From: Obrimoposthia wandeli | Taxonomy: Eukaryota | Direction of reading: 5' to 3' | Assembly (NCBI GenBank): GCA_977020255.1 | Contig: CDROCS010001231.1 | Coordinates: 124,001-176,096, forward strand | Length of the DNA: 52,096 nucleotides | In this document: positions 6,401-51,297 of the stretch, one piece after another | Position numbering within the stretch: the stretch's first letter is position 1 | How the letters are laid out: every line of letters starts with the position of its first letter | Position numbers and translations under genes: made by a program | The notes under the pieces: model-generated | What the model was told of the DNA's origin: nothing | The model's database searches: none | The model's input: only the letters and a program-made list of their open reading frames with translations

Positions 6401-7074
6401 TTATTTGTTAAATACGTTATCAATATATATTTACATTCACATTTGTATAAATTTTATTGTTTACAAGAAAATAGTTATATTTATTTGATAAATACTTCAA
6501 TAAATTCCTCTAAACAATAATTATGTACATTCAAATTTCAAACACTTCTAAGTTTAACAAGAAAATTGTTGTATTTATTTGATGTTTTTATAAAAAATTA
6601 TAAATGAAATATTCAGAGATGATATTTTTTTGTTGTGTAACGTGTGGAAAGTCTTCACTTAATAATACTGTTTTAGGTGAAAATATATACAATTTATATC
6701 CATTTGGTTTCCCATTCCCAGGATTTCGAAAATATATCACCAATGCCATTTCCGAACAGAATATTATTATCTGTTCTGTTGTGTAAATGATCTTTCCAAA
6801 GAATCTGGAAGGAAATTTATCTGGATTTTAAAATCCTAAATACTCATATGTCACCTAATTTGACAATTTTTGAAAATAAATCATAAAAGCTTTTGTAGAT
6901 GTGTTGGGAAAATATATTAACTATTTGTTTAAAAAAGAAAAATAAAAATATAAAATTTTTAAAGAAATAAAAGAAAAAAGGGAATTAATTAATTGAAAAT
7001 TAATTGGGAACTTTCCTTAATTAGGGAAAAGTTCCGATTTTTAAAATTGTGCACTTTGGCATTTTGTATATTCA

Positions 7075-7126
7075 ATCTCCGACGGGAAAAAAGCCCGTTT
7101 CGCCCTGCCGGGCTCATCAGGGAGAT
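7075..7126 (-). ncRNA. Type I hammerhead ribozyme (antisense, U3 of 5' LTR)
   Basis: Minus strand reads AUCUCC-CUGAUGA-GCCC-GGCA-GGGC-GAAA-CGGG-CUUUUUU-CCCG-UC/GGAGAU: intact core, perfect stems I (6 bp), II (4 bp), III (4 bp plus A-U), GUC triplet. Predicted cut between 7081 and 7080. Confidence 0.95.
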
Positions 7127-7129
7127 GGC

Positions 7130-7177
7130 TTGTTATCTCTAACTTCGCGGTGGATTCCGCGAAGCCAGAGATAACAA
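7130..7177 (-). other. 21-bp RNA hairpin abutting the hammerhead (also in the 3' LTR, 20031-20078)
   Basis: Minus strand UUGUUAUCUCU-GG-CUUCGCGG-AAUCCA-CCGCGAAG-UU-AGAGAUAACAA; two A/C mismatches on + become G-U pairs on -. Confidence 0.75.
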
Positions 7178-7695
7178 TAATAAAGCCAGGGAAAAGAGGG
7201 AAAGATTCCCCTTTCATGTGCCGACGAATATCGTCGACATGTGGTGTTAGTGTGCGCAAGTGCACCATTCACACACACACACACTCACTCAACATTAACA
7301 CATCACTCAACTCACTCATTCACTCTCACTACTCACTCAATCGCTCACACAATCCCTTGTTCACTCACTCTCCCTACTCACCTATTCTTTGTGCATATGT
7401 GTGTGTTTAATTTGGCATTTTACACCTGCCCAGAATTTTGAATGACGGTGAAATTTCCCGGCTGCACATGTGTGTGTGTGTGCAGAGCCGGGAAATGCCA
7501 GTTTCCTCTGCCCAAATCTCTTCTCCACACCATGTCTGGTAGTGATTCGGGCAGGCAGCGAGGATTGTTAATGGGGACTACACACTGCCGGTTTCCCACC
7601 TGCCCATCTGCTTACAGATTTATAGACACGCAAGAAGGAAATTGCTTCATAAATTTTTCACAATTTATAAAGACAAAATTATTAAATACAAAAAG

Positions 7696-7997
7696 CGAAT
7701 TATTGAAACTATTTTGAATTATATATCGAATTTATGCAATCGAATTATTGAAACTATTTTGAATTATATATCGAATTTATGCAATCGAATTATTGAAACA
7801 ATTTTGAATTATATATCGAATCTAGGCAATCGAATTATTGAAACAATTTTGAATTATATATCGAATTTATGCAATCGAATTATTGAAACTATTTTGAATT
7901 ATATATCGAAATTATGCAATCGAATTATTGAAACAATTTTGAATTATATATCGAATCTAGACAATCGAATTATTGAAACTATTTTGAATTATATATT
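7696..7997 (+). repeat. 45-bp tandem array (~6.7 copies) inside 5' LTR
   Basis: Unit CGAATTATTGAAAC(T/A)ATTTTGAATTATATATCGAATTTATGCAAT; units 3 and 6 share a CTAG variant. Confidence 0.95.
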
Positions 7998-8082
7998 ACA
8001 ATTTTGAAATACAACTACAATTTTTAGGATCATGATTTTGATTAAATAAATGTTGTTTGCAAGTTTTTGGACTTTTAACAAT

Positions 8083-8096
8083 TGGTGAGCCCGAAG
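8083..8096 (+). promoter_or_regulatory. Primer-binding site (tRNA identity uncertain, Trp- or Ile-like)
   Basis: TGGTGAGCCCGAAG 2 nt after the 5' LTR; TGG complements the tRNA CCA end. Confidence 0.8.
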
Positions 8097-9118
8097 AGCG
8101 GACACACAAAGGTAATTTTGTTGCGTTTTGTTTTTGTTCTTATTGTTGTTATAAGTATATTTACTTTTAAAAAAAAATTTAAAATAGAATTTATTTTCAA
8201 AAACTGTAGTGTAGTATTTTTAATACATTTGTTGATAAATACTATATTTTGAATAAGGTCCCTAAAGGTTTGTAATATTAAATACGTTGTAATTCATTTT
8301 TAATAAGATTATACTGTATTTTTGGAAAAAAAATTATACTGTATATATATATATAAAAATTTTATTTATTTTTTTTAATAATTTCTTGATTATAATAATT
8401 AAAGTAAAGTAAAAATACTTTGTGGTACATACCACCAAATATTTATCGGGGTTTTATTGTTATTTTTGAGGACAAGTACATTGTCTTTAACTATTAAAGT
8501 ATAAATTTAGGACAAATAAGAACACATTTATAAAATAAATTTTTGCAAACGTGTTATTGAGTAAAATAATATCGATTTAGAATTTTCACAAAATTTATTT
8601 TAATATTTTTACTGATTCAGGTTGGAAATAAAATACACTAGGGTTAGCAAATTAACAAATTTTCATAGTTTTTGAAACAGTAGTTTTTGATTCAAAATTA
8701 TCCTGTGGTTGATTGAAAATATATTAATAGTTTATCTTGACATAATTTAAAATTAACAAATTTTCAATATCGGTTTTTAAAATAAAAATAGTGATAACAG
8801 ATTTTACTTAAAAATATATTAATAAGTTAGAAATTTTTCTATTACTTTGGTTGAAAGTGCAGCTCAAATCACGGTAATCGATTATCATAAGGCCGAGCTG
8901 TATTTTAATCACATAGCAGAAATAATTCCTGACTGTTTTTAAAAATTCATTTATTTAAAATATAAAATTATTTAATCGTTTTCAACAAAACTAGACAACA
9001 ATATATAAACACATAAATTAATTTTCGACCCAGTACGCAGGATAATAGTGAACAATACACAAAGATTTCAAAATCTAAACGTAGTGCTAATCTTCACTGG
9101 AGACGCATTCAGACTAGA

Positions 9119-12100
9119 TTGGTAAGAACTAACACAAGTGAAACACTACCACAGAGACCTAAATCCCAGATAAATTTTAGAACAAATAACGAATTTTTCC
9201 CTGAAACTCCGTTAGTTCACCAACACACGGATCGCTTAATTTCAACCGACTCTGAAAACCAAAACCTAACATCAAATTCAGATACAGAAAGTTTATCCTT
9301 ACCACAAACATCTGACTCAGACAACTCGTCAGAAACATCAGAAACAGTGGCAGAACCAGTACCACCTAACATAGAAATAAATAACGAACAAATAAACGAA
9401 GTACCTCAAATGGCAAATCATAGATTAAACATACCACTAGACGCATTTAATGGTGATAAATCATCTTTACCAGAATTCTTGAATAGATATGATTCTTTTG
9501 CTCAAGCATTCGAATGGACAGACCAAGAAAAACTTAGAGTTTTTCCAGCATACCTAAAAGGCACTGCCCTAACCATTTATAGAGGACTAACAAATCTACA
9601 AAAAGACACATGGGAACACTTAGTCCAGCATTTCCAAAATATGGTTTTAGGAGCACAGTCCGACCAGAACTACATAAATCAATTTAGACAACGAGAGCAA
9701 CATGTAGGAGAACCCACAAATATATTCGCAGTCGAATTACGACGACTTGCATTAAAATCTTTTCCCGAAATAGAAGAAGCACAAAGAGAACGATTACTTT
9801 TACATCAATTTTTACATGGATTAAATAACAAAATTCGAGATCACCCTGCCTTACTAGAAGTAGAAAATTTTCAACAGGCTATAGGAAAAGCTCAACTAGT
9901 AGAAGCAAGACTGAATATGATACAGCAAACCGAAGTTTCAGCATTATCTTTTGAAAAAATAGAACGACCACAAACGCCACCAAACTACAACCAATCTAGG
10001 AATTTTAACCAAGATACTCAATATAATTTTCAAAATCCTCAACAATTTAGACCACCAATAAATAATTTTTATAGAAACCAGACAAACAGAAATTTTGCAA
10101 ACTCACAATTTACACAAAGATTTTTTCAAAAATGCACAAATTGTGGACTCCAAAACCATACAATAGAAAATTGTCGAAAATTAAGTAACATAAAATTTTG
10201 CAGATTTTGCAAAAAAGACAATCACACAATTGAAACTTGTAGAAAATTAATAAATAGACAGAGTAATAATACACTACCAAGGAATAATAACTTCAATAAA
10301 CCAAATAATTATGACAATAATCAAAATAGATATTTTAATAATGATACAAAATTTTGTAAGATTTGTAATATGAAAAATCACAACACCAATGACTGTGGAA
10401 AATTAAACACAATGATGAATCAATTTGGAAACACAACAATAAAACAACAACCACAAGTTCAAAAAACAGTACAATTCAGTACTCAAGATCAACAATATAC
10501 CCCAAGAAACCCTATTCACACTATAGAAAATACAGAAACAACTCCAAACACAGACGAATTAGCATTGTTAAAATTACGACTTAAAGAAATACACCAACAA
10601 TGCCATAACAATGAACCACAAACAGATAGAACAAACTTACAATCCGAATTTGGAGACATGTTTAGAGATAGTTGTTTGACATTACAAAAAAATAAATATA
10701 CAATCACAAAAACAAACCAAACTACTCAAACACAAGAAAAGAAAGTAAAACACAAGAAAAATCATAAAACAATAAAAAATCAAAAAACTAAAATTTTTAA
10801 GAATACAAATAATCTTAATAAAATGATGAAAAAATTATGGAAAATTATTCAGATAATATTAATAATATGTCTAATTATGAACATGATAAAACCAATTAAT
10901 GCTTTAGAAGCATATGATTGTTCAAAATATAAAATTCAAAATAAATATTCTTTAATGGATTTACAGCAATGTGCAGACGCTGACCCAAATGAGGTAAAAA
11001 TCCAAAATACTAAGTTGTATCAAGTATATCAGGAAACAGATTTCATATATGCAGAAGTTTTCGAATGTAGAGTACATGTAGAGACATTTATAACATATTG
11101 TGGACAACATAGTCACAATTCAATAGTAAAACCAGCATTAGGAAAAACACCAATAATAGTTGACGCTTTAAATTGTAAAGATGCTTTCGCAACAGGAGAA
11201 TTGAGAATAGATAGAGAAATTAAAGTCCGAGCGGCGAAAAATAAAATAATTCAACAAATGATATCCGTTGTAGGTACGATTAAATCTGATGGAGAATGTA
11301 CAACAGGAACTTATGTAGTAATGGGAGTTAAGCAAAGTGGTTTAGTAGTTATTAAAAATTTTGAAGTCGAACTAAGAACTTTCAAAGCAACATTCGACCC
11401 TTCTACAAACACAATGGTAACAATGCCATTTTGTGAAGCAAACATAGGTCACTGTAACACGGGTTCTTCAATACTTTACTACAAAGTAAAAATCGATCAA
11501 TGTAAATTAATACATTTAAAATCAGAAACTTTTCAAATAATTCAAGGAAAAAGATTTAGAGATGATCCGGAACTAGATCAACAAATTCCAAAGGACATAC
11601 ACAAAATATATAGAACTAGAAAAATACGTAAAACACCAACTCCAACTATATTAATGTCTATTGAACAAGGTTCAGGAATGCGATTTATTAAAAAGAAAGA
11701 GGAATCCCGATGTGGACACTCTGTTTATACAACTAATTATAAAGGAATATATTTAAGTAATGAAAAAATACATAATGCAAAAACGACACCAACTAAATTT
11801 GATATTAAAAATTATGATTATTTTAACAATAAATTAGATTATTTTTATCACAAAGGACTAATGACAATAGAAGCAATATATAGAGAAACCATAATGAATG
11901 ATTGTAAATTAAATCAGGAAATATTAAAAACGAAATTGGCAATTATTGCAACTAACCCAGAATTAATAACACCATTATTACCATTAGCTGACGGTACTTT
12001 TGGAAGAGTAATGGGAGAGGTGTTATACACTTATCAATGTAAAAAAGTAATAGTTAACATAAGAAATCATCAAAAATGTACAAAAGAATTACCAATTTCT

Positions 12101-13405
12101 TACAAAAATAATTCATTATTTGTAGAACCAATCACTAGAATCATACTTTTTAACACTTTTAGCATAAAAGAAATAAACTGCTCAAACATAATGGCACCTC
12201 ATTATCAAATTTCAAAATATATTTGGATTTCACTTCCAAGAAGAGATATTGTCGCAGAACCACAAAAATTACAATTAACCACTCTCAGCAACGACATCAA
12301 TATACAATCAGATAACGAATTAAACACAAAAGGAATTTATATACAGGAAGATATAGATAAGTTAAGAAAAGAAATTTTATTTCCACAAATAAGATCCAGA
12401 ATTTTAACACAAATCATAGAAAGATCAGTACCTGACGGAATTAGCCGTCCCGATTACGACTTATTACTTTCTCCAAATCATTTTATAAAAGCCACTAAAA
12501 ACACCATGTCAAAAATATGGGGTAAATTTTTAATTTTTGGACAAGCATTTTCTGGATTAGTTGGAATATATGCTCTATTAATTTGCTTTAAGATTCTTCT
12601 AAGTCAAATTTTATCAACATATTATATTTATAAAGTTGGAGGATTAACATGGAAATTAATCTTAGGATGTTTCCCATTTTTGGCAAAATTCCTTATTTTT
12701 AATCATCATCAAAACATAGTAAACACATTATCAAATGAAATGCGAGAAACAAATATACAAAAAATTACAAGTACCAAAGAAACAGAAAAAACGGAATCTT
12801 CACAATATCCTGATTTAGAAAAATATATAGATAAAACAACTATACAAAAATCAACTGCACCAACAATATATACAATAAATCAAAAAGATAACGATAAACG
12901 ACCATATGTAAAGGTAGAAATTAACGAATATAAACTTAAAGCTTTAATTGACACAGGATCAAGCGTAACAGTTTTAGACGAATCTTTCTTAAAAACACAA
13001 CAAAAATTACTTCTTCTTAAGGAAAATAGTCAAGTCACAGCAGCAAACGGTCAACCCGTAGATATAATAGGAAAATTAGACTGTCTTTTTAAAATAGGAA
13101 ATAAATTCATAAAAATACCTACAAGAATAATGAAAAATTGTCCTTGCCAAATGATCATAGGAATAGATACATTAAGAAGATTAGGAAATAATTTCCACTT
13201 TGATTTTGAAAAAAATCAAATAAAAGACATTTACAGACCTAACGCCAAAGATGAATACGAGTTAGAAATAAAAGGAGATATCATTCTCCAACCAAGAACA
13301 GAAACAATGTTACAACTAGAAACTAACATAATCACAGAAAAATATGTATTATTTGAACCTTATAAATATCAACAAGAAACCTTGAACTACTTTTGCCAAA
13401 TATAA
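9119..13405 (+). CDS. gag-env-pro: Gag-Env-protease polyprotein (1428 aa)
   Basis: Gag capsid-like region, three CX2CX4HX4C knuckles (10133, 10199, 10355); signal-peptide-like MMKKLWKIIQIILIICLIMNMIKPINA (from 10823); Cys-rich ectodomain starting LEAYDC (10904); hydrophobic segments ~12520-12700; aspartic protease LIDTGS (D at 12950). Frame opens on TTG; first ATG at 9410. Confidence 0.93.
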   Translation: MVRTNTSETLPQRPKSQINFRTNNEFFPETPLVHQHTDRLISTDSENQNLTSNSDTESLSLPQTSDSDNSSETSETVAEPVPPNIEINNEQINEVPQMANHRLNIPLDAFNGDKSSLPEFLNRYDSFAQAFEWTDQEKLRVFPAYLKGTALTIYRGLTNLQKDTWEHLVQHFQNMVLGAQSDQNYINQFRQREQHVGEPTNIFAVELRRLALKSFPEIEEAQRERLLLHQFLHGLNNKIRDHPALLEVENFQQAIGKAQLVEARLNMIQQTEVSALSFEKIERPQTPPNYNQSRNFNQDTQYNFQNPQQFRPPINNFYRNQTNRNFANSQFTQRFFQKCTNCGLQNHTIENCRKLSNIKFCRFCKKDNHTIETCRKLINRQSNNTLPRNNNFNKPNNYDNNQNRYFNNDTKFCKICNMKNHNTNDCGKLNTMMNQFGNTTIKQQPQVQKTVQFSTQDQQYTPRNPIHTIENTETTPNTDELALLKLRLKEIHQQCHNNEPQTDRTNLQSEFGDMFRDSCLTLQKNKYTITKTNQTTQTQEKKVKHKKNHKTIKNQKTKIFKNTNNLNKMMKKLWKIIQIILIICLIMNMIKPINALEAYDCSKYKIQNKYSLMDLQQCADADPNEVKIQNTKLYQVYQETDFIYAEVFECRVHVETFITYCGQHSHNSIVKPALGKTPIIVDALNCKDAFATGELRIDREIKVRAAKNKIIQQMISVVGTIKSDGECTTGTYVVMGVKQSGLVVIKNFEVELRTFKATFDPSTNTMVTMPFCEANIGHCNTGSSILYYKVKIDQCKLIHLKSETFQIIQGKRFRDDPELDQQIPKDIHKIYRTRKIRKTPTPTILMSIEQGSGMRFIKKKEESRCGHSVYTTNYKGIYLSNEKIHNAKTTPTKFDIKNYDYFNNKLDYFYHKGLMTIEAIYRETIMNDCKLNQEILKTKLAIIATNPELITPLLPLADGTFGRVMGEVLYTYQCKKVIVNIRNHQKCTKELPISYKNNSLFVEPITRIILFNTFSIKEINCSNIMAPHYQISKYIWISLPRRDIVAEPQKLQLTTLSNDINIQSDNELNTKGIYIQEDIDKLRKEILFPQIRSRILTQIIERSVPDGISRPDYDLLLSPNHFIKATKNTMSKIWGKFLIFGQAFSGLVGIYALLICFKILLSQILSTYYIYKVGGLTWKLILGCFPFLAKFLIFNHHQNIVNTLSNEMRETNIQKITSTKETEKTESSQYPDLEKYIDKTTIQKSTAPTIYTINQKDNDKRPYVKVEINEYKLKALIDTGSSVTVLDESFLKTQQKLLLLKENSQVTAANGQPVDIIGKLDCLFKIGNKFIKIPTRIMKNCPCQMIIGIDTLRRLGNNFHFDFEKNQIKDIYRPNAKDEYELEIKGDIILQPRTETMLQLETNIITEKYVLFEPYKYQQETLNYFCQI
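10904..12780 (+). other. env: Chuvirus/Tas-type (herpes gB-like, class III) glycoprotein domain within ORF1
   Basis: Motifs AYDC..YSL...C, ECRVHV...YCGQHSH, GEVLYTYQC...C..ELP....F..P.TRI, GIY..EDI..LR..I.FP match my recollection of the chuviral glycoprotein family found in Pao/Anakin and nematode elements; not confirmed by search. Confidence 0.8.
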
Positions 13406-15350
13406 TTTGTAAAATAAAAAACAACACAATACCAATCAGAATCCTAAATGCAGACATTAATGAAATTCATCTCAAGGAAGGAGTACGTCTTGGAAAAATA
13501 AGTGTTATTCAAAATATTGAATTAATAGATAATGATAAAATAGAAGATAAATCTACGATAAATTTTAACGATATCAAATTAAATGATTATGAAAAATCAA
13601 AACTTAAAACTTTAACAGAAAAATATGATGTAATATTTGCTAAAAATGAATACGATTTAGGTCGAACAAATTTGATAAAACATAATCTTCCGTTAACAAC
13701 AAACACAGCAATAAAACAACGACCCTACCGAATTCCATATGCCTACAGAGATGAGGCTCAAAGACAAATAAAATGAATGTTAGAAAATGAAATTGTTAGA
13801 AGACGTTTTTCTGCATGGACATCACCTGTTGTTTTAGTAAAAAAGAAAGATGGTTCTTTGAGATTTTGCGTAGACTACAGAAAACTAAACGAAGTCACTC
13901 ACAAAGATACTTATCCACTGCCAAGAATTGATGAAATATTAGACAAACTAAAAAATGCACAAGTATTTACAACTTTAGATTTACAGAGTGGATACTGGCA
14001 AATAGAAATTGAGGAGTCAGATAAATATAAAACAGCTTTCTCAACAGGAGAAGGATTGTATGAATTCAATGTCTTACCATTTGGATTAACCGGAGCTCCA
14101 GCAACATTTCAGAGATGTATGAGCCATATTTTAATGGATGCAGATCACGTAATGGTATATATCGATGACATTCTTATTTTTTCGAAAAATTTTGAAGAAC
14201 ATTTAAAATATTTAGAAAACGTATTCTTAAGATTACAGGTAGCAGGATTAAAACTAAAACCAAAGAAATGTGAATGGATAAAAGATAAAGTAAATTACTT
14301 AGGACATGCTGTATCAGCAAAAGGAATACAACCAGACGAGAGTAATGTAGAAAAGATTAAAAATTTTCCAATCCCAAAAACAGTAAAAAATATATAGGAA
14401 TTTTTAGGGCTTGCAGGATATTATCGAAGATTTATTAGAAATTTCGCACAAATAGCAATACCATTAAATAAACTTATTAAAAAAGATGAAAAATTTGAAT
14501 GGGAAAAAGAACAACAAGAATCTTATGAATATTTAAAACAAAAACTAATCGAAAAACCTATACTTAGATATCCTAATTTTAATAACTCATTTTTAGTTAT
14601 GACTGACGCCAGTGGTTATGCGTTAGGAGCAGTTTTAGGACAACAGGAAAATAACGAAAAAGATCATGTGATAGCATATGCGAGCAGAGGTCTTAAAAAA
14701 CATGAAAAGAATTACTCAACGATAGAAAGAGAATGCCTAGCTATTTGTTTCGCAATGGAACATTTTAAACATTACTTATTAGGTCGAAAGGTTTATGTTT
14801 ACACAGATCAAAGACCATTACAATGGCTTTTAAATCATAAGGATACAACATCTAGATTAATGAGATGGGCATTGATTTTACAAAAATATGATATTGAAAT
14901 AAAATATAGAAAAGGAAAATCTAACGCTAATGCAGATTGTCTATCACGAATAAGAGAAGAAATAAACGAAATAACTGCAAATGACATCGAATTAAATCTT
15001 TTTACAATAATTCAAGCTAAATATGATAAAAAAATAATTACTAAACTTCAAAGCAAAGATAATGAAATTCAGCAAATAACTAAATACATTAGCACAAACG
15101 AAGTACCAACAGATGAAAAATTAAGAAAACATTTAAAAATATACGAATCACGATACAAATATAGTAATGAAATATTATATTATTTAAATGACAAAAATCT
15201 ATATTCACTAGTTATTCCTAAAGAAATTCAGTGTCAATTACTTCTTCAATATCATAATGGAGCCCTAGGAGGACATTTATCATCAAAAAAGACACATTCA
15301 CGATTAAATTTAAAATACTATTGGATTGACATGAAAGAAGATGTAAAAAT
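13393..15350 (+). CDS. pol: Pol: reverse transcriptase, RNase H and integrase zinc-finger start (interrupted in this sequence)
   Basis: WTSPVVLVKKKDGSLRFCVDYRKLN, PFGLTGAPATFQR, YIDDILIFS, TDASGYALGAVL, ERECLAI, NANADCLSR. One frame throughout with in-frame TGA (13774) and TAG (14395); -1 shift needed near 13391 (from PR) and at the A5 run 15345-15349 (into WCKTCEIC). Confidence 0.93.
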
Positions 15351-17666
15351 TGGTGTAAAACATGTGAAATATGTCTTAAACGGAAAAATACTTTACGTAC
15401 CACAAAAATACCTTTAAAGCCAATACCTTATCCATCAGCCCCCATGGAAACTGTTGCCATGGATGTAATGGGACCATTACCTGAAACACCCCGAGGAAAT
15501 CGATATATAATAGTATTTTCTGATTATTTTACAAGATGGCCAGAGGCTTTTCCAACACATGATCATAAGGCTGAAACCATCGCGAAGGTTTTAGTCGAAA
15601 AAATTATTTTTACTTTCGGTGCACCCCGAAAATTATTAACCGACAAAGGTCCTGAATTTATAAATAATGTATTAGCGTCAATAGCTGAAATTTTTCACAT
15701 AAAGACGATCAATACAACACCATATCACCCTCAAACTGACGGGTTAGTAGAAAGATTTAATAGAACCCTCGAAGATATGATGGCATCATACACAAACAAC
15801 AATCAAACAGATTGGGATTTACACATACCTCCATGCCTTTTTGCATATAGAACATCAGTACATGCATCCACAGGAGAAACACCTTTTTATCTTATGTTCC
15901 TCAGAGATCCTCAAATGCCTATTGACCTAACATTACTACAACCTACTACACAATATTTAGAAATACCTGAATATAAAATAGAAATTAGAGAAAGAATAAA
16001 ACTAGCATTCGAAAAAGCTAAACTATTTGTAAAAAACATACAAGAAAATTACAAAGAATATTATGATAGAAGAACTAAGCCATCAAATATAAAAAGCGGA
16101 AGTAAAGTGATGATTCACAATCCACAAATCAATGTAGGATTGTCTCACAAATTATCAAAACCATACAAAGGACCATATACAGTCATTAGTACCAACGGAA
16201 CCAACATAACAGCTAAACTAGATAATGAACCAAAATCAAAAGAAATAAGAGCACATATAAACAGATGTCGAGAAATACCTGAGGAGAATACAAAAGTAAA
16301 AAGTCACAAATATAACTTAAGATCAACTAATGATAATACAGTTCTACAAATGTTGACAATAAAAAACTCACAAAAACAAAACAAAACTATTTTGAGTCAT
16401 CAAACCAGAAATACAATAAAAATATCAATAAAAGAAATTGGTAAAATAATGATGTTATTGATAATATATTTTATAATAAAATATAACCTACTGAAAGTAA
16501 ACGCAACAAACATAAATGACAATCAATCAATCATACAACAACAAACAAATAAATACGACTCAACAACTCATCTCATAAAAAATTTTGGATTAATAACAAT
16601 AATACCTAAAATCACATCAATAAAGTTAAAAATTTCTCTTTTTACAAACAAAACAGGAAATGTGCAAATCACACAAACAGATAGAAAACAAAATATAATT
16701 ATTTCAGGAATAAAATCACAAAAATATACAATACCATTTTTAAGAACAGAAACACAATATAAAATAAGAATTAAGTCGAAATTAAAAAATATAACACTCT
16801 ATGAAAGAATTATAGAAACTCACATATACCTAGCATCAATATTAAAAACAACAGCAAAATATATATCAAAACATAAAATAATGATAAAATGGGAATTTCA
16901 ACTAAAAATAGATGACTTAGATAAAGCCCTCATTAGAATTAGATATAGAGGACATAATGCTAATTTTTGGAAAGACTCAGAAAAACAATTAGAAAATACA
17001 CAAACTAAAACAAATTTAACCATAGAAAATATAAGATATCCAGAGAAAATAATAATAGACAATAGAGAATGCGTAATCACTAATAAACCAATAATGTACA
17101 GACAATGGAGTCAAAAGTTTGAAAGTTATAAAAATCTAACAAAATTAACAATTTTAGGAAATAAGATATCCAAACTATATCAACCTACAATTTTTTGTGG
17201 TCGTTGGTCAACAGTAAAAATTAAGAAATATGTTAAAGATATAACCACAAAACAATTGCTACATACCACAACATTTACATCAAAAATTTACAGAGTTACA
17301 AATCAAGTTGAAATTACGGAAAAAATAAGAATTAAATTAAAATTAAAAACAACAGAAATAATATCATATAAATCATTTAATGAAAGTTTAAAAATGCACT
17401 ATAGTAAACAAGAACATTCAAGGAATGAAAATAAAGAAGAACTTATAATAATAGTTATAGTAATCGAAATAATTACATTTATAAATCAAATATCATGGAA
17501 AATGTTAATTTTGAAACATACAAAAACGATAGAAACAAAACAACGAAAACACTTTTGTGGGCCCCCAGGCCCTTTTACTATTTATATTATCCCCAAGGAT
17601 GATAATTCTTCAGAATTATCCATAAATACTGTAATAGAAAATAGAAAAAGAAATATAACACAATAA
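15351..17666 (+). CDS. Integrase core and GPY/F domain fused in frame to a predicted secreted/membrane protein (signal-like segment, FN3-like repeats, TM)
   Basis: CEIC zinc ligands, AMDVMGP / LTDKGPEF / GLVERFNRTL (D,D35E), KPYKGPY. Then MMLLIIYFIIKYNLLKVNA (16449), YTIPFLRTETQYKIRIKSK, IKWEF...RIRYRG...W, hydrophobic LIIIVIVIEIITFI (~17442-17500). Integrase call is firm; FN3 call is inference. Confidence 0.85.
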   Translation, partial: WCKTCEICLKRKNTLRTTKIPLKPIPYPSAPMETVAMDVMGPLPETPRGNRYIIVFSDYFTRWPEAFPTHDHKAETIAKVLVEKIIFTFGAPRKLLTDKGPEFINNVLASIAEIFHIKTINTTPYHPQTDGLVERFNRTLEDMMASYTNNNQTDWDLHIPPCLFAYRTSVHASTGETPFYLMFLRDPQMPIDLTLLQPTTQYLEIPEYKIEIRERIKLAFEKAKLFVKNIQENYKEYYDRRTKPSNIKSGSKVMIHNPQINVGLSHKLSKPYKGPYTVISTNGTNITAKLDNEPKSKEIRAHINRCREIPEENTKVKSHKYNLRSTNDNTVLQMLTIKNSQKQNKTILSHQTRNTIKISIKEIGKIMMLLIIYFIIKYNLLKVNATNINDNQSIIQQQTNKYDSTTHLIKNFGLITIIPKITSIKLKISLFTNKTGNVQITQTDRKQNIIISGIKSQKYTIPFLRTETQYKIRIKSKLKNITLYERIIETHIYLASILKTTAKYISKHKIMIKWEFQLKIDDLDKALIRIRYRGHNANFWKDSEKQLENTQTKTNLTIENIRYPEKIIIDNRECVITNKPIMYRQWSQKFESYKNLTKLTILGNKISKLYQPTIFCGRWSTVKIKKYVKDITTKQLLHTTTFTSKIYRVTNQVEITEKIRIKLKLKTTEIISYKSFNESLKMHYSKQEHSRNENKEELIIIVIVIEIITFINQISWKMLILKHTKTIETKQRKHFCGPPGPFTIYIIPKDDNSSELSINTVIENRKRNITQ

Positions 17667-17855
17667 TCAAAATTTTTTAAAAACCGTTTAAGTAACAAAA
17701 AATGTTAGTACTATTATGTAAATCTAAATTAATTAGGAAATAGAATAAAAATTTGATATATATATTTTTAAAGACGATTTAATGAAATAATATTAAAATA
17801 AAATCACCAGGAAACGCATCCTGAAATTTAATAATGGTTATTTTTAGATATAAAA

Positions 17856-18251
17856 ATGAACAGATTGGCAAAAGTTTGTAAAAAATGCAAAAAATTAGAG
17901 AAAAAGATTCGAGATGTTTCCAGACAGCATGACGACTACTATATAAAGATCACAACTCAAAATGAATCACTGAAACAGTTAATAAAACAAAGTGTGGAAG
18001 AAAAATTGAATAATGATTTAACAATTGACGAACTAGAAGGGAGATTGACACATAGTTTTGGCAGAATAGACAATTTAATACCACAAACTTTAAGTCAACG
18101 ATCAACTATAGCCTCATTAAGAAGACAAATGATGACCTATAGCGACATGATAAACTTTTATTTGACCATTAATCCTACTATCCCAACTAATACAACACTT
18201 GATGATGGATATGACTCGGATATGAACATTGGTGAACAAAATTCTGGTTAA
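17856..18251 (+). CDS. Accessory ORF, 131 aa, predicted coiled coil
   Basis: ATG-initiated intact ORF inside the element; CKKC followed by heptad-like LEKKIRDV...LKQLIKQSVEEKL...LEGRL. Confidence 0.65.
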   Translation: MNRLAKVCKKCKKLEKKIRDVSRQHDDYYIKITTQNESLKQLIKQSVEEKLNNDLTIDELEGRLTHSFGRIDNLIPQTLSQRSTIASLRRQMMTYSDMINFYLTINPTIPTNTTLDDGYDSDMNIGEQNSG

Positions 18252-18419
18252 ATTATAATCATACATCCTTCTTTTGTACAAATTGTCTAATTTTTTTTTA
18301 ATAAGTTTATTTTCATGACAAATCCCACATACTGCATGGATAAGACTGATATTTTTATAACTTTAAGACTGTGAAATAATTGTATTATTTTATTCAACTA
18401 ACAAATCTATTAAAGCAGA

Positions 18420-19592
18420 ATGGATAACAATCACCTGGATACGACTCCAGACCAGCTCACTCGGTCAGATCAAACAAAAAGCACAGCAAAAATAGAAAGA
18501 GGAAAAACGGAAAATATGCCAGAAAGGTGGTTTTTAGCAAAATTCTTGTATCAAAAGATGCGTCAGTTTAGCATTGCATACTTTAGAAACAACGGAGGAA
18601 GAAAAATGTTTTCAAATCAAACATTTCTTCCTAATAATAAAATTACCAATAAAATTACCACAGAAGAAAGAACTAGCGCACTTATTTTTTCCAATGAAAA
18701 AAGACCAACCCATATGGCTCTCAGTGAAATATTCCCCAACATTAATTGTGAAAAAATATATATTCACGTGGCACTAGGAGTAGCCCATTTAAAAACCAAA
18801 TCAGATAAGACATTAAACTTTCTGATGATAGGAAATCACACCTACACCTTACAAGCAGCTCAATTAGAAAATCAATATAGCATAAAAATAGGAAGAGGAC
18901 CAAATCTATTATTTATAGAAAAAATAAGAAAAGCAGAAGAACCTCAACAAATAGCCCTTTTTGAATTAAAAAAGAAGCCAGCAATTTTATTCCTCGATTG
19001 CGAAATGGTGATATCAGTAGATAAACAGCCAGTGTTAGCAAGTGTTTCTATTATAAATTACATAGGTAACGTAATTATAGATACACTGTGCGTAACTAGA
19101 AACAGAGTAAGAAATTACGTTACTAGAATAACTGGACTGTCAGATAGAAAGTTACAAGGATGTAGAGATGCTGATGAAGTAATTGAGGAAGTAAAAAACA
19201 TTGTGTATGGTAACATCATCGTAGGTGTGGGATTAACAAACGATTTAAAAGCTTTACGCCTACAGAAATGGATGTTATTCAACATTGTTGATTTAGGAAT
19301 ATCCAAAAGCATAAAATCAGAACTAAATCACAATCACCCAAATATTGGACTCGCCAACATGGTGCGGAAATACTTAAATATAGAAACACAAAAAGGAGTT
19401 CACACTAGCATGGAAGATGCAAATCACACCCGAAAAATTTTCATAATGAAGGAGGAAATGTTGATTAGAGAGTTTGATTTGACCGAGGTGATGAATCCAC
19501 CATCTAGCGAGAACAACCCCAGTTCATCGTTCTCGCATAAGACCGGAAACTCGGAGTCCGGTACACAAAACTCCCCGATTTTGTTGGATTAA
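18420..19592 (+). CDS. Accessory DEDDh 3'-5' exonuclease (REX4/ISG20-like) with ~190-aa unknown N-terminal domain
   Basis: ExoI LDCEMV (18996), YVTRITGL, ExoII GVGLTNDLKAL, ExoIII HTSMEDA (19401); all four acidic residues and the His are present. Confidence 0.9.
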   Translation: MDNNHLDTTPDQLTRSDQTKSTAKIERGKTENMPERWFLAKFLYQKMRQFSIAYFRNNGGRKMFSNQTFLPNNKITNKITTEERTSALIFSNEKRPTHMALSEIFPNINCEKIYIHVALGVAHLKTKSDKTLNFLMIGNHTYTLQAAQLENQYSIKIGRGPNLLFIEKIRKAEEPQQIALFELKKKPAILFLDCEMVISVDKQPVLASVSIINYIGNVIIDTLCVTRNRVRNYVTRITGLSDRKLQGCRDADEVIEEVKNIVYGNIIVGVGLTNDLKALRLQKWMLFNIVDLGISKSIKSELNHNHPNIGLANMVRKYLNIETQKGVHTSMEDANHTRKIFIMKEEMLIREFDLTEVMNPPSSENNPSSSFSHKTGNSESGTQNSPILLD

Positions 19593-19782
19593 GGTAGTAT
19601 TGTTATTATTTTATTTCTGTTTTCATTCTTGTCTAAATTTTTAACGATATTTAACCAGACATGATTGTGATTAATAAAACATTGATCAGTTGTAACATAC
19701 AAACAACACTAGGTAACAATAGAAACAAGACAAAATAGTTTAACTAATAATTAAGATAAAAATTATGATTCTGAGGACAGAG

Positions 19783-19802
19783 ACTTTTATGACCCGGAGG
19801 AT
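19783..19802 (+). promoter_or_regulatory. Polypurine-tract-like plus-strand primer region
   Basis: Purine-rich ...GACCCGGAGGAT immediately before the 3' LTR TG; short and imperfect. Confidence 0.5.
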
Positions 19803-19975
19803 TGTTGGGAAAATATATTAACTATTTGTTTAAAAAAGAAAAATAAAAATATAAAATTTTTAAAGAAATAAAAGAAAAAAGGGAATTAATTAATTGAAAA
19901 TTAATTGGGAACTTTCCTTAATTAGGGAAAAGTTCCGATTTTTAAAATTGTGCACTTTGGCATTTTGTATATTCA

Positions 19976-20027
19976 ATCTCCGACGGGAAAAAAGCCCGTT
20001 TCGCCCTGCCGGGCTCATCAGGGAGAT
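19976..20027 (-). ncRNA. Type I hammerhead ribozyme (antisense, U3 of 3' LTR)
   Basis: Identical to 7075-7126; predicted cut between 19982 and 19981, 12,901 nt from the other site. Confidence 0.95.
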
Positions 20028-20598
20028 GGCTTGTTATCTCTAACTTCGCGGTGGATTCCGCGAAGCCAGAGATAACAATAATAAAGCCAGGGAAAAGAGG
20101 GAAAGATTCCCCTTTCATGTGCCGACGAATATCGTCGACATGTGGTGTTAGTGTGCGCAAGTGCACCATTCACACACACACACACTCACTCAACATTAAC
20201 ACATCACTCAACTCACTCATTCACTCTCACTACTCACTCAATCGCTCACACAATCCCTTGTTCACTCACTCTCCCTACTCACCTATTCTTTGTGCATATG
20301 TGTGTGTTTAATTTGGCATTTTACACCTGCCCAGAATTTTGAATGACGGTGAAATTTCCCGGCTGCACATGTGTGTGTGTGTGTGCAGAGCCGGGAAATG
20401 CCAGTTTCCTCTGCCCAAATCTCTTCTCCACACCATGTCTGGTAGTGATTCGGGCAGGCAGCGAGGATTGTTAATGGGGACTACACATTGCCGGTTTCCC
20501 ACCTGCCCATCTGCTTACAGATTTATAGACACGCAAGAAGGAAATTGCTTCATAAATTTTTCACAATTTATAAAGACAAAATTATTAAATACAAAAAG

Positions 20599-20900
20599 CG
20601 AATTATTGAAACTATTTTGAATTATATATCGAATTTATGCAATCGAATTATTGAAACTATTTTGAATTATATATCGAATTTATGCAATCGAATTATTGAA
20701 ACAATTTTGAATTATATATCGAATCTAGGCAATCGAATTATTGAAACAATTTTGAATTATATATCGAATTTATGCAATCGAATTATTGAAACTATTTTGA
20801 ATTATATATCGAAATTATGCAATCGAATTATTGAAACAATTTTGAATTATATATCGAATCTAGACAATCGAATTATTGAAACTATTTTGAATTATATATT
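20599..20900 (+). repeat. 45-bp tandem array inside 3' LTR
   Basis: Same unit order and variants as in the 5' LTR. Confidence 0.95.
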
Positions 20901-23281
20901 ACAATTTTGAAATACAACTACAATTTTTAGGATCATGATTTTGATTAAATAAATGTTGTTTGCAAGTTTTTGGACTTTTAACAGATGTGTTGGGTTGGGG
21001 TAGTGTCGGATTAAGACATGCGCTTTGGAGGCAGCAGCCCACGACCCTCCAGATATTATATGGCAGTTTTTTTCCCTAAAGCAATATATTGCTTTTAAAA
21101 CATTACTTTACTGTCAGTTCACGTCAACTATCAAGTGTTTTAAGAAAATGAAAGTTCTACAAAGTTGCTCACTTTATTTATTTTGTTTTATCGGCAGATT
21201 ATTTCGTTTTTAATTGACAAGCGGATAGTATATGCAGGTACGTTTGGGTAATAGTAGTTATCTATTATTATTTGATAGCATAAAATTGCGTAAAGCAAAT
21301 ATGTGAATTATACTTTTCTTACCAATTTATAAGTTTTTATTATTTTGTATTACACTGTCAAACTAGTATAATATGTCTGGTAAAATATTGAATTATTTGA
21401 TTATTGTTACGAGTTGATTGAATTTACCGTTGTCGTAAACAGAAGAAAACACCTTATATAATTCGACATATTATACAAAATAAGTAGCTGTATTGTAACA
21501 GCTTACAAAAACATTTTCTCAAAATATCAATTTAGTAATATTGTTATCATAATATCATATTCTTGCTTACCAAAATATTAAAAGAGGTATTTCTAACATT
21601 AACTTTTAGTAATCGGACGTTCAGATAGGATGTCTGCAGAAACTATAGCCCATGGACCTACAATATAATAATCCAGCCCTGTGTTCGGGACAAAAGCTAG
21701 CTACCGAAACCAGAAAATAAATCTGGGGTCTCTCTATTTGCAGGTCACGCATTCTATCCCAGAACTACCGTACATTGTAATTTCACCCGAATTTCTAAAT
21801 GGGGATTATGGACCTAAAATTATCAGTAACATATTTTATCAAATATAAATCTTTTAAATTGTAAAAATTAACAAAGCAAAAGGCGATACATATAAACTGT
21901 GGGGAGAAACTATGTCTCATTATTTTTTAAAATAATTTAATCTATAATTTTTTGAGTATTTAAAAATTATTCGAACTGCCTGGACTATATTATTCAGTAA
22001 TTTATTCCAATGCTATTGCAGATTTTCATGGTAAATGTAACAGTCAATTTCATTTATAAAAGTTTATTGTCCAAAACTGATTATACAAATCAAATGTCGG
22101 TTATTTGTAATACATATATTTCATGGGAGAGGCACAAAAGTATGTCTTTCTTCTGAGACGATTTTTTACACGATAGAAGATAATCAGAACACGAGCTAAT
22201 TGTGAAATAGGATACTATCCTCCTGATTGAATGTTATTTTATATTTATTAAGAGGAAATAATAATTACCCAAAAATTAACTATGGCCTATTGCAAAGTGA
22301 TATGTAGCTTTTGAATTTGTTATTGATTTTTATTTTAAGTCAATAGGTTATATTTATAATTACATAATAGCTCAAAGTGGAAGAGATCTAAATCAAATGG
22401 TGACAGGAAAGAACAAAATTCTTTCAACAATGAAGCTTTCGTTAAAAATGTCTCTCCGGTATTTTGATCACTTTATGAACTATCTTACTTTATGGTCATG
22501 TAATAATCTCAAAATATCAATTGCATGCTAGAAATGAAATTAACTTTCAAAATGATTTAATAAGTTGATTAAATGCCATATTGGCCTCACGTTCCAAAAT
22601 AACCATTCACCTTTACCATCTAAGAAATTAATTATTTTTTGGATGAACCCGTTTACTGTCACACTTCAAAATGCAGCTCATGTGGTTTAAATTTATAGAA
22701 GACTTTGAAGTATAGAAATCACGCAAATCCCTAGACTTTTAATCCTGTAAATAATACTCAAATCCATGCAGTTCCCTCTGCACCGAATGAGTCAACCAAG
22801 ATTTACATGAGGACGCTTTTAAAATATAAATAAAATACCTGATTTTAAAATTTTGTCATTGCCTACATTAACATGAGATTTTATTAATTTGGGAATAAAT
22901 TATTCATTATTCTAGCTTCCAAAGTAAATTTTTTAAACTGCCAGAACTAAGGTAACCTAGAATTGATCTTCAACTTGACTGTTATTTTGATTTTATAACA
23001 CCCCATGAAATTCAATAATAAAACTATTCGACGTTTTGTAGTAATATAGTAATGTAATCTAGAGAATAACAAATAAACAACATGTGCATGTGTAAACAAA
23101 TTTCAGGTAGAAAAGATTACATCATAGCTTGAGGGAGACAGAAATAAGTGTATAGAAACTAGGCATAAATAATCACTGACACACACAAATACAGCCAGTG
23201 ACCAGATTTAATACAAGTGCATCTGGTATTGCACTTGAATGTTTGGTGCACACATAATAAGCTCAGCACATACAAACATTG

Positions 23282-49828: not shown

Positions 49829-50210
49829 CATACCTTCAAACGTTCAAGTTATAACTGAGTCCGACCCTTTCATATATATTAACGACCACAACCTTTTAGA
49901 TGTATTGATTAAGCATACGGTCACAACCATACCTTTCGTCTTCAAGTCAAAACTGAGTCCGACCTTTTTCATATAGGATTGACTACAACCTTGGGTGTGT
50001 TGGCCAACCATGATGGTCATGACCATACCTTCAAATCCTTCAAATCAAACTGAGTCCGGACCCTTTCATCTATGGACGACCACAACTTTAGATGTTGATT
50101 AAGTATAGATATTATGACCATACCTTCAAACTTTCAAGTCAAAACCGAGTCCGACCCTTTCATCTATGGACGACCACAACCCTTAGGTGTAAGTTGGCCA
50201 ACAATAGATT
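49829..50210 (+). repeat. Diverged ~96-bp tandem repeat, 4 copies in ABAB order
   Basis: CATACCTT at 49829, 49928, 50024, 50119; shared AACTGAGTCCGACCCTTTCAT...GACCACAAC; alternating tails (TTAGATGT..GATTAAG versus GGTGT..TTGGCCAAC). Confidence 0.85.
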
Positions 50211-50965: not shown

Positions 50966-51297
50966 TTATCCACTTTCAATTTATTTGAAATTAGTTATCC
51001 ACTTCTCAATTTGTTTGAAACCAGTTATCCACTTCACCTATTTGAAATCAGTTATCCACTTCTCAATTTGTTTGAAACCAGTTATCCACTTTCGTTCTAT
51101 TTGAAATCAGTTATCCATCACTTCAATTTGTTTGAAACCAGTTATCCACTTCTCAATTTGTTTGAAACCAGTTATCCACTTCTCAATTTATTTGAAACCA
51201 GTTAACCACTTCTAACGGTTTTTGAAACTAGTTATTCACTTCTCAATTTATTTGAACCAGTTATCCAATTTTCAATTTGTTTGAAACCATTTACCCA
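50966..51297 (+). repeat. 30-bp tandem array (~11 copies) inside third LTR
   Basis: Unit TTATCCACTTCTCAATTTGTTTGAAACCAG with scattered variants. Confidence 0.92.

What the first reader, a model, noticed from the sequence alone, without database searches (positions are those of the whole stretch)
6902..20983. Candidate new system: enveloped gypsy element with antisense LTR ribozymes, two surface proteins and an exonuclease
Seen: one young element combines gag-env-pro, pol-IN fused to a second membrane protein, a coiled-coil ORF, a DEDDh exonuclease and antisense hammerheads in both LTRs. Known: hammerheads occur in non-autonomous plant retrozyme LTRs, metazoan tandem retrozymes and Penelope pLTRs; chuvirus/gB-like env occurs in Pao/Tas-type elements; DEDDy exonuclease ORFs occur in bdelloid LTR elements. 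I am not aware of this combination in an autonomous Ty3/gypsy element. Inference: an infectious retrovirus-like lineage with an RNA-level counter-silencing module in which the ribozyme cuts antisense RNA and the exonuclease removes RNA or small-RNA intermediates.
Basis: partly seen in the sequence, partly recalled or inferred. Interest (0 to 1): 0.95.

Follow-up and report, generated by a model that had tools for sequence, protein, structure and literature searches.

The report
Enveloped gypsy retroelement with LTR hammerhead
This is a recently inserted, partly broken copy of an already described kind of virus-like Ty3/gypsy retroelement whose envelope gene sits between gag and protease. Its relatives all carry an extra RNA exonuclease gene and a second membrane-protein tail, while the self-cleaving hammerhead in its repeats was found only in this family.

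Summary
The element spans 6902-20983, with 1179/1181-nt LTRs that are 99.75% identical, TG..CA ends and a GATG target-site duplication. One intact ORF encodes gag (three CCHC knuckles), an internal signal peptide, a Monjiviricetes/gB-type fusion glycoprotein (Pfam E 7e-90) and an aspartyl protease. Pol is Ty3-like and is broken by 2 in-frame stops and 1 frame change. A membrane-protein-like extension follows integrase. A separate ORF encodes an ISG20/REXO4-like exonuclease with all five DEDDh residues. Both LTRs carry a complete type I hammerhead on the minus strand.

The interpretation as a new system is only partly supported. The gag-env-pol order with a gB-type env in Ty3/gypsy elements is published for nematodes, bryozoans and flatworms. 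Eight related elements from other samples share the gag-env-pro order wherever that region is present. All share the exonuclease ORF, and the seven that include that region share the post-integrase extension bounded by hydrophobic segments. Those two genes are therefore lineage features. None of the relatives has a hammerhead in the flanks available.

The hammerhead lies in a ~250-nt hairpin-plus-ribozyme segment that also occurs at 44717-44971, near the 5' end of a host ALIX-like gene. Ribozyme and exonuclease therefore do not travel together. A joint counter-silencing role remains conjecture.

The parts
6898..6901 (.). Target-site duplication, left copy (GATG)
   Evidence: It is identical to 20984-20987.
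6902..8080 (+). 5' LTR (1179 nt, TG..CA)
   Evidence: It is 99.75% identical to the 3' LTR. It contains a 45-bp tandem array at 7696-7996.
7075..7126 (-). Type I hammerhead ribozyme motif in the 5' LTR, antisense to the element
   Evidence: Rfam RF00163 scores 32.4 bits (gathering score 34), E 8.6e-5. The core CUGAUGA / GAAA / GUC is complete, and helices I/II/III have 6/4/5 bp as the minimum-energy fold.
7132..7175 (-). 19-bp hairpin 5 nt upstream of the hammerhead on the same RNA strand
   Evidence: The 106-nt fold has z-score -6.5, and no shuffle folds as well. The G-U pairs exist only on the minus-strand RNA. The hairpin is also present at the second locus.
8083..8100 (+). Putative primer-binding site (starts TGG, 2 nt after the LTR)
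   Evidence: This was read from the sequence. The matching tRNA was not identified, and there is no tRNA gene in the window.
9410..13405 (+). ORF1, intact: gag (CCHC knuckles 10133-10396), internal signal peptide from 10823, class III-type env ectodomain and TM anchor to about 12622, protease about 12893-13189
   Evidence: The same in-frame gag-env-protease order occurs in P0001, P0002, L106 and L109, and env-protease in the cut P0003.
13393..17666 (+). pol (RT, RNase H, integrase plus C-terminal extension), broken by 2 in-frame stops and 1 frame change. The frame change at the ORF1/pol junction is of unresolved nature.
   Evidence: Pfam finds RVT_1 (E 1.4e-40), RT_RNaseH, Integrase_H2C2 and rve. 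The best solved relative of the RT is Ty3 RT 4OL8, E 1.7e-61.
16422..17666 (+). Post-integrase extension: hydrophobic segment, about 320 aa rich in N-x-S/T sites, second hydrophobic segment, short tail
   Evidence: The same layout, without detectable sequence similarity, is found in L001, L002, L003, L004, L106 and L109, plus the C-terminal part of L105. No Pfam family matches it, and the structure model is unreliable.
17856..18251 (+).
   Evidence: Its only Pfam hit is a sub-threshold one to SlyX. It has no counterpart in relatives.
18420..19592 (+). Exonuclease ORF (390 aa). The DEDDh domain lies at about 18984-19460, behind a beta-rich N-terminal domain of unknown function.
   Evidence: Pfam RNase_T. 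D193, E195, D275, H328 and D333 are all present. It matches ISG20, ISG20L2 and SDN1 by sequence and by fold. The nearest named proteins are REXO4.
19803..20983 (+). 3' LTR (1181 nt)
   Evidence: Its tandem array lies at 20599-20899.
19976..20027 (-). Hammerhead motif in the 3' LTR, identical to the 5' copy
20984..20987. Target-site duplication, right copy (GATG)
44717..44971 (-). Second copy of the hairpin-plus-hammerhead segment, outside the element. The hammerhead-like part lies at 44860-44909.
   Evidence: It is 66-69% identical to LTR positions 42-283. The core nucleotides are kept, helix I has two both-sided changes plus a 1-nt loss, and helix III is re-paired. The Rfam match is weak (23.5 bits, E 0.074). 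It lies on the sense strand of an ALIX-like host gene.

Best explanation
The region is one recent insertion of an endogenous retrovirus-like Ty3/gypsy (Metaviridae) element. It belongs to the published gag-env-pol type, whose envelope protein is a class III (gB / chuvirus G-like) fusion glycoprotein.

Shown by the data:
- The element's boundaries are defined.
- Gag, signal peptide, env, membrane anchor and protease lie in one open frame.
- The RT is Ty3-like.
- Pol is broken three times, so this copy cannot make a full pol polyprotein.
- Every relative found carries a DEDDh exonuclease ORF after pol.
- Seven of the eight relatives, all that include the region, have a C-terminal extension of integrase bounded by two hydrophobic segments.

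Inferred: the in-frame arrangement is kept across relatives that are only 36-45% identical in env. The element is therefore probably translated as a membrane-spanning polyprotein. In that model gag stays in the cytosol, the internal signal peptide puts the env ectodomain into the ER lumen, and the anchor returns the chain to the cytosol for protease and pol. The post-integrase hydrophobic segment would repeat the trick for a second, fast-evolving surface domain.

Inferred: the exonuclease was captured from a cellular REXO4/ISG20-type gene and is kept active. I think its most likely role is to trim or destroy RNA 3' ends that would harm the element, such as small silencing RNAs or double-stranded RNA ends. 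I put that at about 35%, by analogy with SDN1, ERI-1-type enzymes and the arenavirus NP exonuclease.

The hammerhead is a real type I ribozyme motif. It is a family-specific passenger or acquisition, sitting in a ~250-nt hairpin-plus-ribozyme segment near the outer edge of U3 that also exists elsewhere in the genome. If active, it cuts only minus-strand transcripts that cross the LTR. Whether that benefits the element is open.
For: - Structure of the insertion.
- Domain content and order.
- Ty3 affinity of the RT: (4OL8 at E 1.7e-61, against 1e-34 or weaker for caulimovirus, foamy virus and HIV RTs). Pfam finds RT_RNaseH and Integrase_H2C2 and no Pao peptidase.
- Same architecture in relatives from six other samples. 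L106 and L109 have gag-env-pro-pol as a single ORF.
- Post-integrase layout in seven relatives.
- Exonuclease: catalytic residues are kept in the window and in 22-25 of the 25 aligned homologues, which include those encoded by the related elements. Matches to ISG20, ISG20L2 and SDN1. Nearest named cellular proteins are cestode REXO4, one of them a multi-exon host gene.
- Hammerhead statistics and fold.
- Second homologous copy with re-paired helices.
- No hammerhead in relatives.
- Published precedent for the gag-env-pol order: PMC13524379.
Against: - No relative was recovered with two complete LTRs, so absence of the hammerhead rests on partial flanks. L003 and L005 cover the equivalent 3' position. 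L001, L002 and L109 cover 5' or 3' flanks of unknown completeness.
- The second hammerhead copy is degenerate (1-nt loss in helix I, misfolded minimum-energy structure). The covariation evidence therefore comes from only two sequences.
- The polyprotein topology is inferred from hydrophobicity alone. A borderline second hydrophobic stretch after the env anchor would invert the topology if it spans the membrane.
- The exonuclease role is analogy only.
- The key nematode paper (Sacco et al. 2022) could not be read. I cannot say whether it already reports the exonuclease or the extension.
- The host species is unknown.
Confidence: 0.72

Rival explanations
1. One reading: the antisense hammerhead and the exonuclease form one RNA-level counter-silencing module. 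The ribozyme cuts antisense RNA and the exonuclease removes the products or small RNAs.
For: Both parts are real and look intact. The exonuclease's closest solved relatives include a small-RNA-degrading nuclease, SDN1. The hammerhead sits where it would sever minus-strand read-through just before it enters the coding region from the 3' LTR (coordinates).
Against: The two parts do not co-occur. The exonuclease is present in 8 of 8 related elements, and the hammerhead in none of their available flanks. The hammerhead segment also exists on its own at 44717-44971. No expression or small-RNA data are available.
Confidence: 0.1
2. The hammerhead segment is ancestral LTR sequence, and the second locus (44717-44971) is the remnant of a solo LTR of a sister family. 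On this view the ribozyme is a conserved U3 feature of a group of families.
For: At the second locus a TGTTG motif lies about where the LTR start would fall, and a possible ..ACA end with a matching ATTA 4-mer lies 0.9 kb downstream. A solo LTR antisense to a host gene is the usual orientation inside genes (host gene).
Against: Similarity stops after LTR position 283, and the remaining ~900 nt of the LTR has no match there. The end motifs are short and expected by chance in AT-rich DNA. There is no internal element sequence nearby.
Confidence: 0.3
3. The hammerhead is a chance match with no biological meaning.
For: The score is below Rfam's gathering threshold (32.4 against 34). Nothing is reported at the gathering threshold or in the whole-window search. 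Helix I is short and open, with no loop for tertiary contacts.
Against: E is 8.6e-5 across 4227 families in 15 kb, and the core pattern is expected 0.01 times in the window. All conserved core positions are present, and the canonical three-helix fold is the minimum-energy structure. A diverged homologous copy keeps the core and re-pairs helices I and III.
Confidence: 0.05
4. The env between gag and protease results from a nested insertion or a chimeric assembly, or the element is a BEL/Pao element with a chuvirus-like glycoprotein.
For: Chuvirus-like glycoproteins are best known from mosquito BEL/Pao elements (PMC7642597, listed).
Against: The same in-frame order is kept in relatives that are 36-45% identical in env and come from several samples. 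The matching LTRs and target-site duplication argue against misassembly. The RT is Ty3-like, and the Pfam signature is gypsy-type, not Pao-type.
Confidence: 0.02

Closest known systems
GAG-ENV-POL Ty3/gypsy 'errantiviruses' with HSV gB-type env (Chary & Hayashi, eLife 2026, PMC13524379), and the nematode endogenous retroviruses of Sacco et al. 2022 (J Gen Virol 103:001739)
   Same: The backbone is Ty3/gypsy, the env is a class III gB/chuvirus-like protein, and env lies between gag and pol. The published elements have multiple young copies in invertebrate genomes. From memory, not verified here, Sacco et al. describe a continuous gag-env-pro-pol ORF, as seen in L106 and L109.
   Different: PMC13524379 never uses the words exonuclease or hammerhead. 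I found no description there of a post-integrase membrane extension. I could not place this element in their trees because their sequences were not on hand.
Mosquito BEL/Pao elements with Chuviridae-like glycoprotein (Dezordi et al. 2020, PMC7642597)
   Same: A retroelement has captured a glycoprotein family from negative-strand RNA viruses.
   Different: The backbone differs (BEL/Pao there, Ty3-like RT here). The env position also differs.
Bdelloid rotifer Vesta/Juno LTR elements with an exonuclease ORF3 (Rodriguez et al. 2017, PMC5408684)
   Same: An LTR retroelement carries an extra 3'-5' exonuclease ORF downstream of pol. Membrane-type and coiled-coil-type extra ORFs also occur there.
   Different: The rotifer enzyme is DEDDy (RNase D/WRN-like). 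Here it is DEDDh of the ISG20/REXO4 group, so this is a separate capture.
Hammerhead-bearing retroelements: plant LTR retrozymes, animal non-LTR retrozymes, Penelope-like elements (review PMC7761336)
   Same: A hammerhead sits inside a terminal repeat. It is type I with a stable helix III, as in invertebrate retrozymes. The shared segment of ~250 nt falls in the 150-300 bp size range of animal retrozyme units.
   Different: Plant retrozymes are non-coding, and from memory their type III ribozymes are on the sense strand. Animal retrozymes lack LTRs and form tandem arrays. Penelope ribozymes are minimal, dimeric forms. Here a protein-coding, enveloped gypsy element carries a single antisense copy per LTR.
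ISG20 / ISG20L2 / REXO4 / SDN1 DEDDh RNA exonucleases
   Same: The fold and all five catalytic residues match.
   Different: The gene is carried by a retroelement, and its ~180-aa N-terminal domain is shared only with the closest element-borne relatives.

Membership tests
Ty3/gypsy (Metaviridae) LTR retroelement | Direct LTRs with TG..CA ends and a short target-site duplication | tested here: met
   The LTRs are 1179 and 1181 nt and 99.75% identical, with a GATG duplication.
Ty3/gypsy (Metaviridae) LTR retroelement | Domain order PR-RT-RH-IN, with the RT closest to Ty3-type RTs | tested here: met
   Pfam gives the domain order. The top solved match is Ty3 RT 4OL8 at E 1.7e-61. No formal phylogeny was made.
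Ty3/gypsy (Metaviridae) LTR retroelement | Gag with CCHC zinc knuckle(s) | tested here: met
   There are three C-x2-C-x4-H-x4-C motifs.
Published GAG-ENV-POL gB-type env lineage (nematode, bryozoan, flatworm elements) | Class III (gB / chuvirus G-like) envelope glycoprotein | tested here: met
   PF24664 matches at E 6.8e-90, and a signal peptide and TM anchor are present. No solved structure matches by sequence, and the fold itself was not modelled.
Published GAG-ENV-POL gB-type env lineage (nematode, bryozoan, flatworm elements) | env placed between gag and pol | tested here: met
   The order is the same in relatives.
Published GAG-ENV-POL gB-type env lineage (nematode, bryozoan, flatworm elements) | Phylogenetic grouping of POL/ENV with the published elements | not testable with these tools
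Hammerhead ribozyme, type I | Conserved core (CUGANGA, GAAA, cleavage triplet UH) joined by three helices, with helix I open | tested here: met
   
Hammerhead ribozyme, type I | Score at or above Rfam's curated threshold | tested here: not met
   The score is 32.4 bits against a threshold of 34, and there is no hit at the gathering threshold.
Hammerhead ribozyme, type I | Conservation of the pairing through compensatory change | tested here: inconclusive
   Only one diverged copy exists. It shows two both-sided changes in helix I and a re-paired helix III, but also a 1-nt loss in helix I.
Hammerhead ribozyme, type I | Self-cleavage | not testable with these tools
   No RNA data are available.
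Plant LTR retrozyme | Non-coding, non-autonomous element with sense-strand type III hammerheads in both LTRs | tested here: not met
   The element encodes gag, env, pro, pol and an exonuclease, and its ribozyme is type I and antisense. The family definition is from PMC7761336; the sense-strand orientation of the plant ribozymes is from memory.
Animal non-LTR retrozyme | Tandem repeats of 150-300 bp, each with a type I hammerhead | tested here: not met
   The segment size fits (~250 nt), but both occurrences are single copies, with no tandem array.
DEDDh exonuclease, ISG20/REXO4 group | The five catalytic residues D-E-D-D-h in three motifs | tested here: met
   D193, E195, D275, H328 and D333 are present.
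DEDDh exonuclease, ISG20/REXO4 group | Fold of the exonuclease domain | tested here: met
   The model has pLDDT above 90 over most of the domain. ISG20 1WLJ matches with TM-score 0.86 on the target and rmsd 2.1 A.
BEL/Pao element with chuvirus-like glycoprotein | Pao-type peptidase and BEL/Pao RT | tested here: not met
   The protease matches retropepsin and gag-asp_proteas families only, and the RT is Ty3-like.

The most novel reading that the evidence does not exclude
This lineage of enveloped gypsy elements would be translated as a flavivirus-like membrane-threaded polyprotein with two surface domains. It would carry a captured REXO4/ISG20-type exonuclease as a suppressor of host RNA silencing. 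In this family the antisense hairpin-plus-hammerhead in U3 would work as an insulator that severs minus-strand read-through, so that no double-stranded RNA forms over the coding region. Alternatively, with one ribozyme in each LTR, cleavage would release a full-length antisense RNA with ligatable ends, in the manner of a retrozyme.
Probability: 0.1. Interest if true: 0.85.

Novelty: new variant of a known kind. Interest (0 to 1): 0.5.

Why it matters
The gag-env-pol enveloped gypsy elements were described only recently, and published accounts concentrate on gag, pol and env. Two further features hold wherever the region was recovered: an ISG20/REXO4-like exonuclease in all eight relatives, and a second membrane-bounded domain fused to integrase in seven. 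If these are confirmed on the published elements, the standard gene map of this group needs two more entries. They would also raise two testable questions: how a retroelement uses an RNA exonuclease, and how a gag-env-pro polyprotein is threaded through a membrane. In the literature I could search, I found no earlier report of a complete type I hammerhead inside the LTR of a protein-coding LTR element. It links the retrozyme and hammerhead world to autonomous LTR elements in an animal. The evidence so far suggests it is a family-specific acquisition, not part of a system.

Tried and rejected
- **Rfam thresholds:** The gathering-threshold search and the whole-window E-value search returned nothing. 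The hammerhead appears only when a shorter stretch is searched, because of the threshold and the speed filters.
- **Exact look-up of the exonuclease ORF:** It is not on record.
- **Word-indexed protein searches:** Searches with the exonuclease ORF and with the post-integrase extension found nothing. The full HMMER search did find exonuclease relatives.
- **Pattern scans of public collections:** Scans of metagenome and viral contigs with the hammerhead core plus helix II returned 99 loci listed in the outputs. All match only over the 24-35-nt motif, none is AT-rich, and none encodes the element's proteins.
- **Structure of the extension:** A single-sequence prediction gave mean pLDDT 33. No fold search was run, so the FN3 idea stays untested.
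- **Env against solved structures:** There was no meaningful sequence match.
- **Sacco et al. 2022:** The paper is not held, and no paper mentions the sample accessions of the relatives.
- **Relaxed alignment of the LTR against the second locus:** This gave only AT-rich noise beyond the ~250-nt segment.
- **Host species:** It was not identified. The nearest named cellular exonucleases are from cestodes, which is weak evidence for a flatworm host.
- **Rejected explanations:** I rejected a BEL/Pao identity, a chimeric assembly, and the 131-aa ORF as a conserved gene.

Full report
**What is there.** Direct-repeat search and pairwise alignment define one LTR element at 6902-20983. The LTRs are 1179 and 1181 nt and differ by one mismatch and two gap columns (99.75% identity). 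They begin TG and end CA, and the insertion is flanked by GATG on both sides. Each LTR holds a 45-bp tandem array of 6.7 copies. The window has about 30% G+C and no assembly gaps.

**Coding content.**
- ORF1 is open from its first ATG at 9410 to 13405. It contains a gag region with three CCHC knuckles and a hydrophobic signal-like segment starting at a Met-Met at 10823. A Monjiviricetes_fusion glycoprotein domain follows (PF24664, E 6.8e-90), then a transmembrane anchor and a retropepsin with DTG.
- Pol follows with RVT_1, RT_RNaseH, Integrase_H2C2 and rve. The RT piece matches the solved Ty3 RT at E 1.7e-61, far better than caulimovirus, foamy virus or HIV RTs. No Pao-type peptidase is found. 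The backbone is therefore Ty3/gypsy.
- Measured against the uninterrupted pol of two relatives, pol in this copy has two in-frame stops and one frame change.
- The ORF1/pol junction also changes frame. Two relatives read straight through this region and two others also change frame, so I cannot say whether the junction here is programmed.
- As it stands, this copy is young but not fully coding.

**The extra genes.** The integrase ORF runs on for about 400 residues. These comprise a hydrophobic segment, about 320 residues rich in N-x-S/T sites, a second hydrophobic segment and a short tail. No Pfam family matches this stretch, and a single-sequence structure model was unusable (pLDDT 33).

The 131-aa ORF called coiled-coil has only a sub-threshold Pfam hit and no counterpart in relatives. 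I do not count it as a gene.

The last ORF (18420-19592) encodes a DEDDh exonuclease with all five catalytic residues present. ISG20, ISG20L2 and plant SDN1 are its best solved matches by sequence. ISG20 superposes on the modelled domain with a TM-score of 0.86 on the target. The nearest named proteins are REXO4 from cestodes, fungi and a crustacean. The Mesocestoides one is a multi-exon gene between ordinary host genes. This suggests capture from a cellular REXO4-type gene.

**Relatives.** A search with the env region of ORF1 returned three long proteins that combine the same glycoprotein family with a protease. P0002 also has a zinc-knuckle hit. Their contigs, and contigs found through the exonuclease, gave nine related loci from six other samples: L001-L005, L105, L106, L109 and L110. 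L109 and L110 carry the same exonuclease protein (P0011) and are one element seen in two samples, so there are eight related elements.
- The order gag-env-protease-RT-RH-IN is the same wherever the region is present. In L106 and L109 it forms one ORF of 4057 and 2871 residues.
- Every one has an exonuclease ORF after pol that matches the window's.
- Every one that includes the region has two hydrophobic segments, 95-380 residues apart, after integrase. No sequence similarity is detectable there, as expected for a fast-evolving surface domain.
- Some relatives have further cargo, namely extra protease-like repeats and ankyrin repeats.

The exonuclease and the membrane extension are therefore lineage features, not peculiarities of this copy.

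**The hammerhead.** Rfam finds Hammerhead_1 on the minus strand at 7075-7126 and 19976-20027. The score is 32.4 bits, 1.6 bits under the curated threshold, with E 8.6e-5 over all families. The core pattern is expected 0.01 times in the window. All core nucleotides are present, and helices I, II and III have 6, 4 and 5 pairs. The canonical three-way junction is the minimum-energy fold of the 52-nt RNA.

A perfect 19-bp hairpin lies 5 nt upstream on the same strand (z-score -6.5). Its two G-U pairs exist only in the minus-strand RNA. The stable helix III resembles invertebrate retrozyme ribozymes more than the minimal Penelope type (PMC7761336). The two LTR copies are identical and count once.

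**A second copy.** LTR positions 42-283 match window 44717-44971 at 66-69% identity, and nothing else in the LTR matches there. That copy keeps the hairpin and every core nucleotide. It changes both sides of two helix I pairs and re-pairs helix III with a different loop. It has also lost one nucleotide of helix I and no longer folds correctly. It lies on the sense strand of an ALIX-like host gene, upstream of that gene's first recognisable BRO1 exon and just after a GTAAGT motif.

The ribozyme is thus part of a ~250-nt repeat with its own history. I cannot tell whether the second locus is a remnant solo LTR of a sister family or an independent retrozyme-like insertion.

**Co-occurrence.** No hammerhead was found in any related locus, by Rfam, by pattern or by a structure-aware scan that recovers the window's own copies. 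L003 and L005 include the region equivalent to the 3' LTR position. The other loci include flanks of unknown completeness. The ribozyme and the exonuclease therefore do not behave as one inherited module.

**Comparison with the literature.** Chary and Hayashi (PMC13524379) report that Ty3/gypsy elements of Nematoda, Bryozoa and Platyhelminthes carry only gB-type env and are arranged GAG-ENV-POL. They cite Sacco et al. 2022 for the nematode elements. Their text mentions neither exonuclease nor hammerhead. I could not read Sacco et al., and my recollection that it describes a continuous gag-env-pro-pol ORF is from memory.

Exonuclease ORFs in LTR elements are known from bdelloid rotifers, but those are of the DEDDy type (PMC5408684). 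Searches for DEDDh exonucleases in LTR elements, and for hammerheads in autonomous LTR elements, found no precedent in the library.

**How it most likely works.** Shown: the gene order, the intact catalytic motifs, and the conservation of the layout. Inferred: the frame is kept open from gag through env to protease in relatives that share only 36-45% of env residues. Translation as one polyprotein is therefore the simplest reading. The internal signal peptide and the anchor would place env in the ER lumen and protease and pol in the cytosol, and a second signal-anchor after integrase would do the same for the extension. A borderline extra hydrophobic stretch after the env anchor leaves the topology uncertain.

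The role of the exonuclease is unknown. Removal of small RNAs or double-stranded RNA ends is my leading guess, at about one in three. If the hammerhead is active, it can only cut minus-strand RNA crossing the LTR. That could limit antisense read-through into the element, but it may equally be a neutral passenger.

**Verdict.** The element is a new variant of a known kind. The counter-silencing system is an untested idea that the distribution data do not favour.

Noticed in passing
window 44717-44971 (minus strand), with the hammerhead-like part at 44860-44909: A diverged copy of the LTR's hairpin-plus-hammerhead segment lies in the sense orientation of an ALIX-like host gene. It sits right after a GTAAGT motif and upstream of the BRO1 exon at 43729-43995. 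It may be an intronic hammerhead remnant.
   Followed up: partly
window 20984-20994: The 7 nt after the right target-site duplication (TGTTGGG) are identical to the first 7 nt of the LTR. This could reflect a target preference or insertion beside an older LTR end. No further similarity was found downstream.
   Followed up: partly
window 35804-43995 (minus strand): Exons of a host ALIX/PDCD6IP-like gene are present: BRO1 at 43729-43995 and 38502-38999, and the ALIX V-domain at 37649-38071 and 35804-36097. An SH3BGR-like exon lies at 25460-25711 (minus).
   Followed up: partly
window 41037-41261 (+): This is a fragment of a pogo/Tigger-type DDE_1 transposase (Pfam E 1.9e-9), lying between the BRO1 exons of the ALIX-like gene.
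   Followed up: no
window 49829-50190 and 50966-51297: There are two tandem arrays: a 95-nt unit in 3.8 copies and a 30-nt unit in 11.2 copies. No ribozyme match was found in them.
   Followed up: no
L001:9624-16784 and L002:1544-13811: These relatives carry several tandem protease-like domains, and L001 has ankyrin repeats after integrase. This lineage seems prone to accumulating cargo.
   Followed up: partly
L015, L023, L035, L058 (metagenome contigs): The hammerhead core motif recurs at regular spacings of about 550-925 nt on short contigs. That would fit tandem or circular ribozyme-bearing replicons. They are unrelated to the element.
   Followed up: no
window 23285-24109 (minus strand): This is a long, acidic, low-complexity ORF (275 aa, rich in Glu, Asp and Lys) with no Pfam family. 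Several short tandem repeats overlap it.
   Followed up: no
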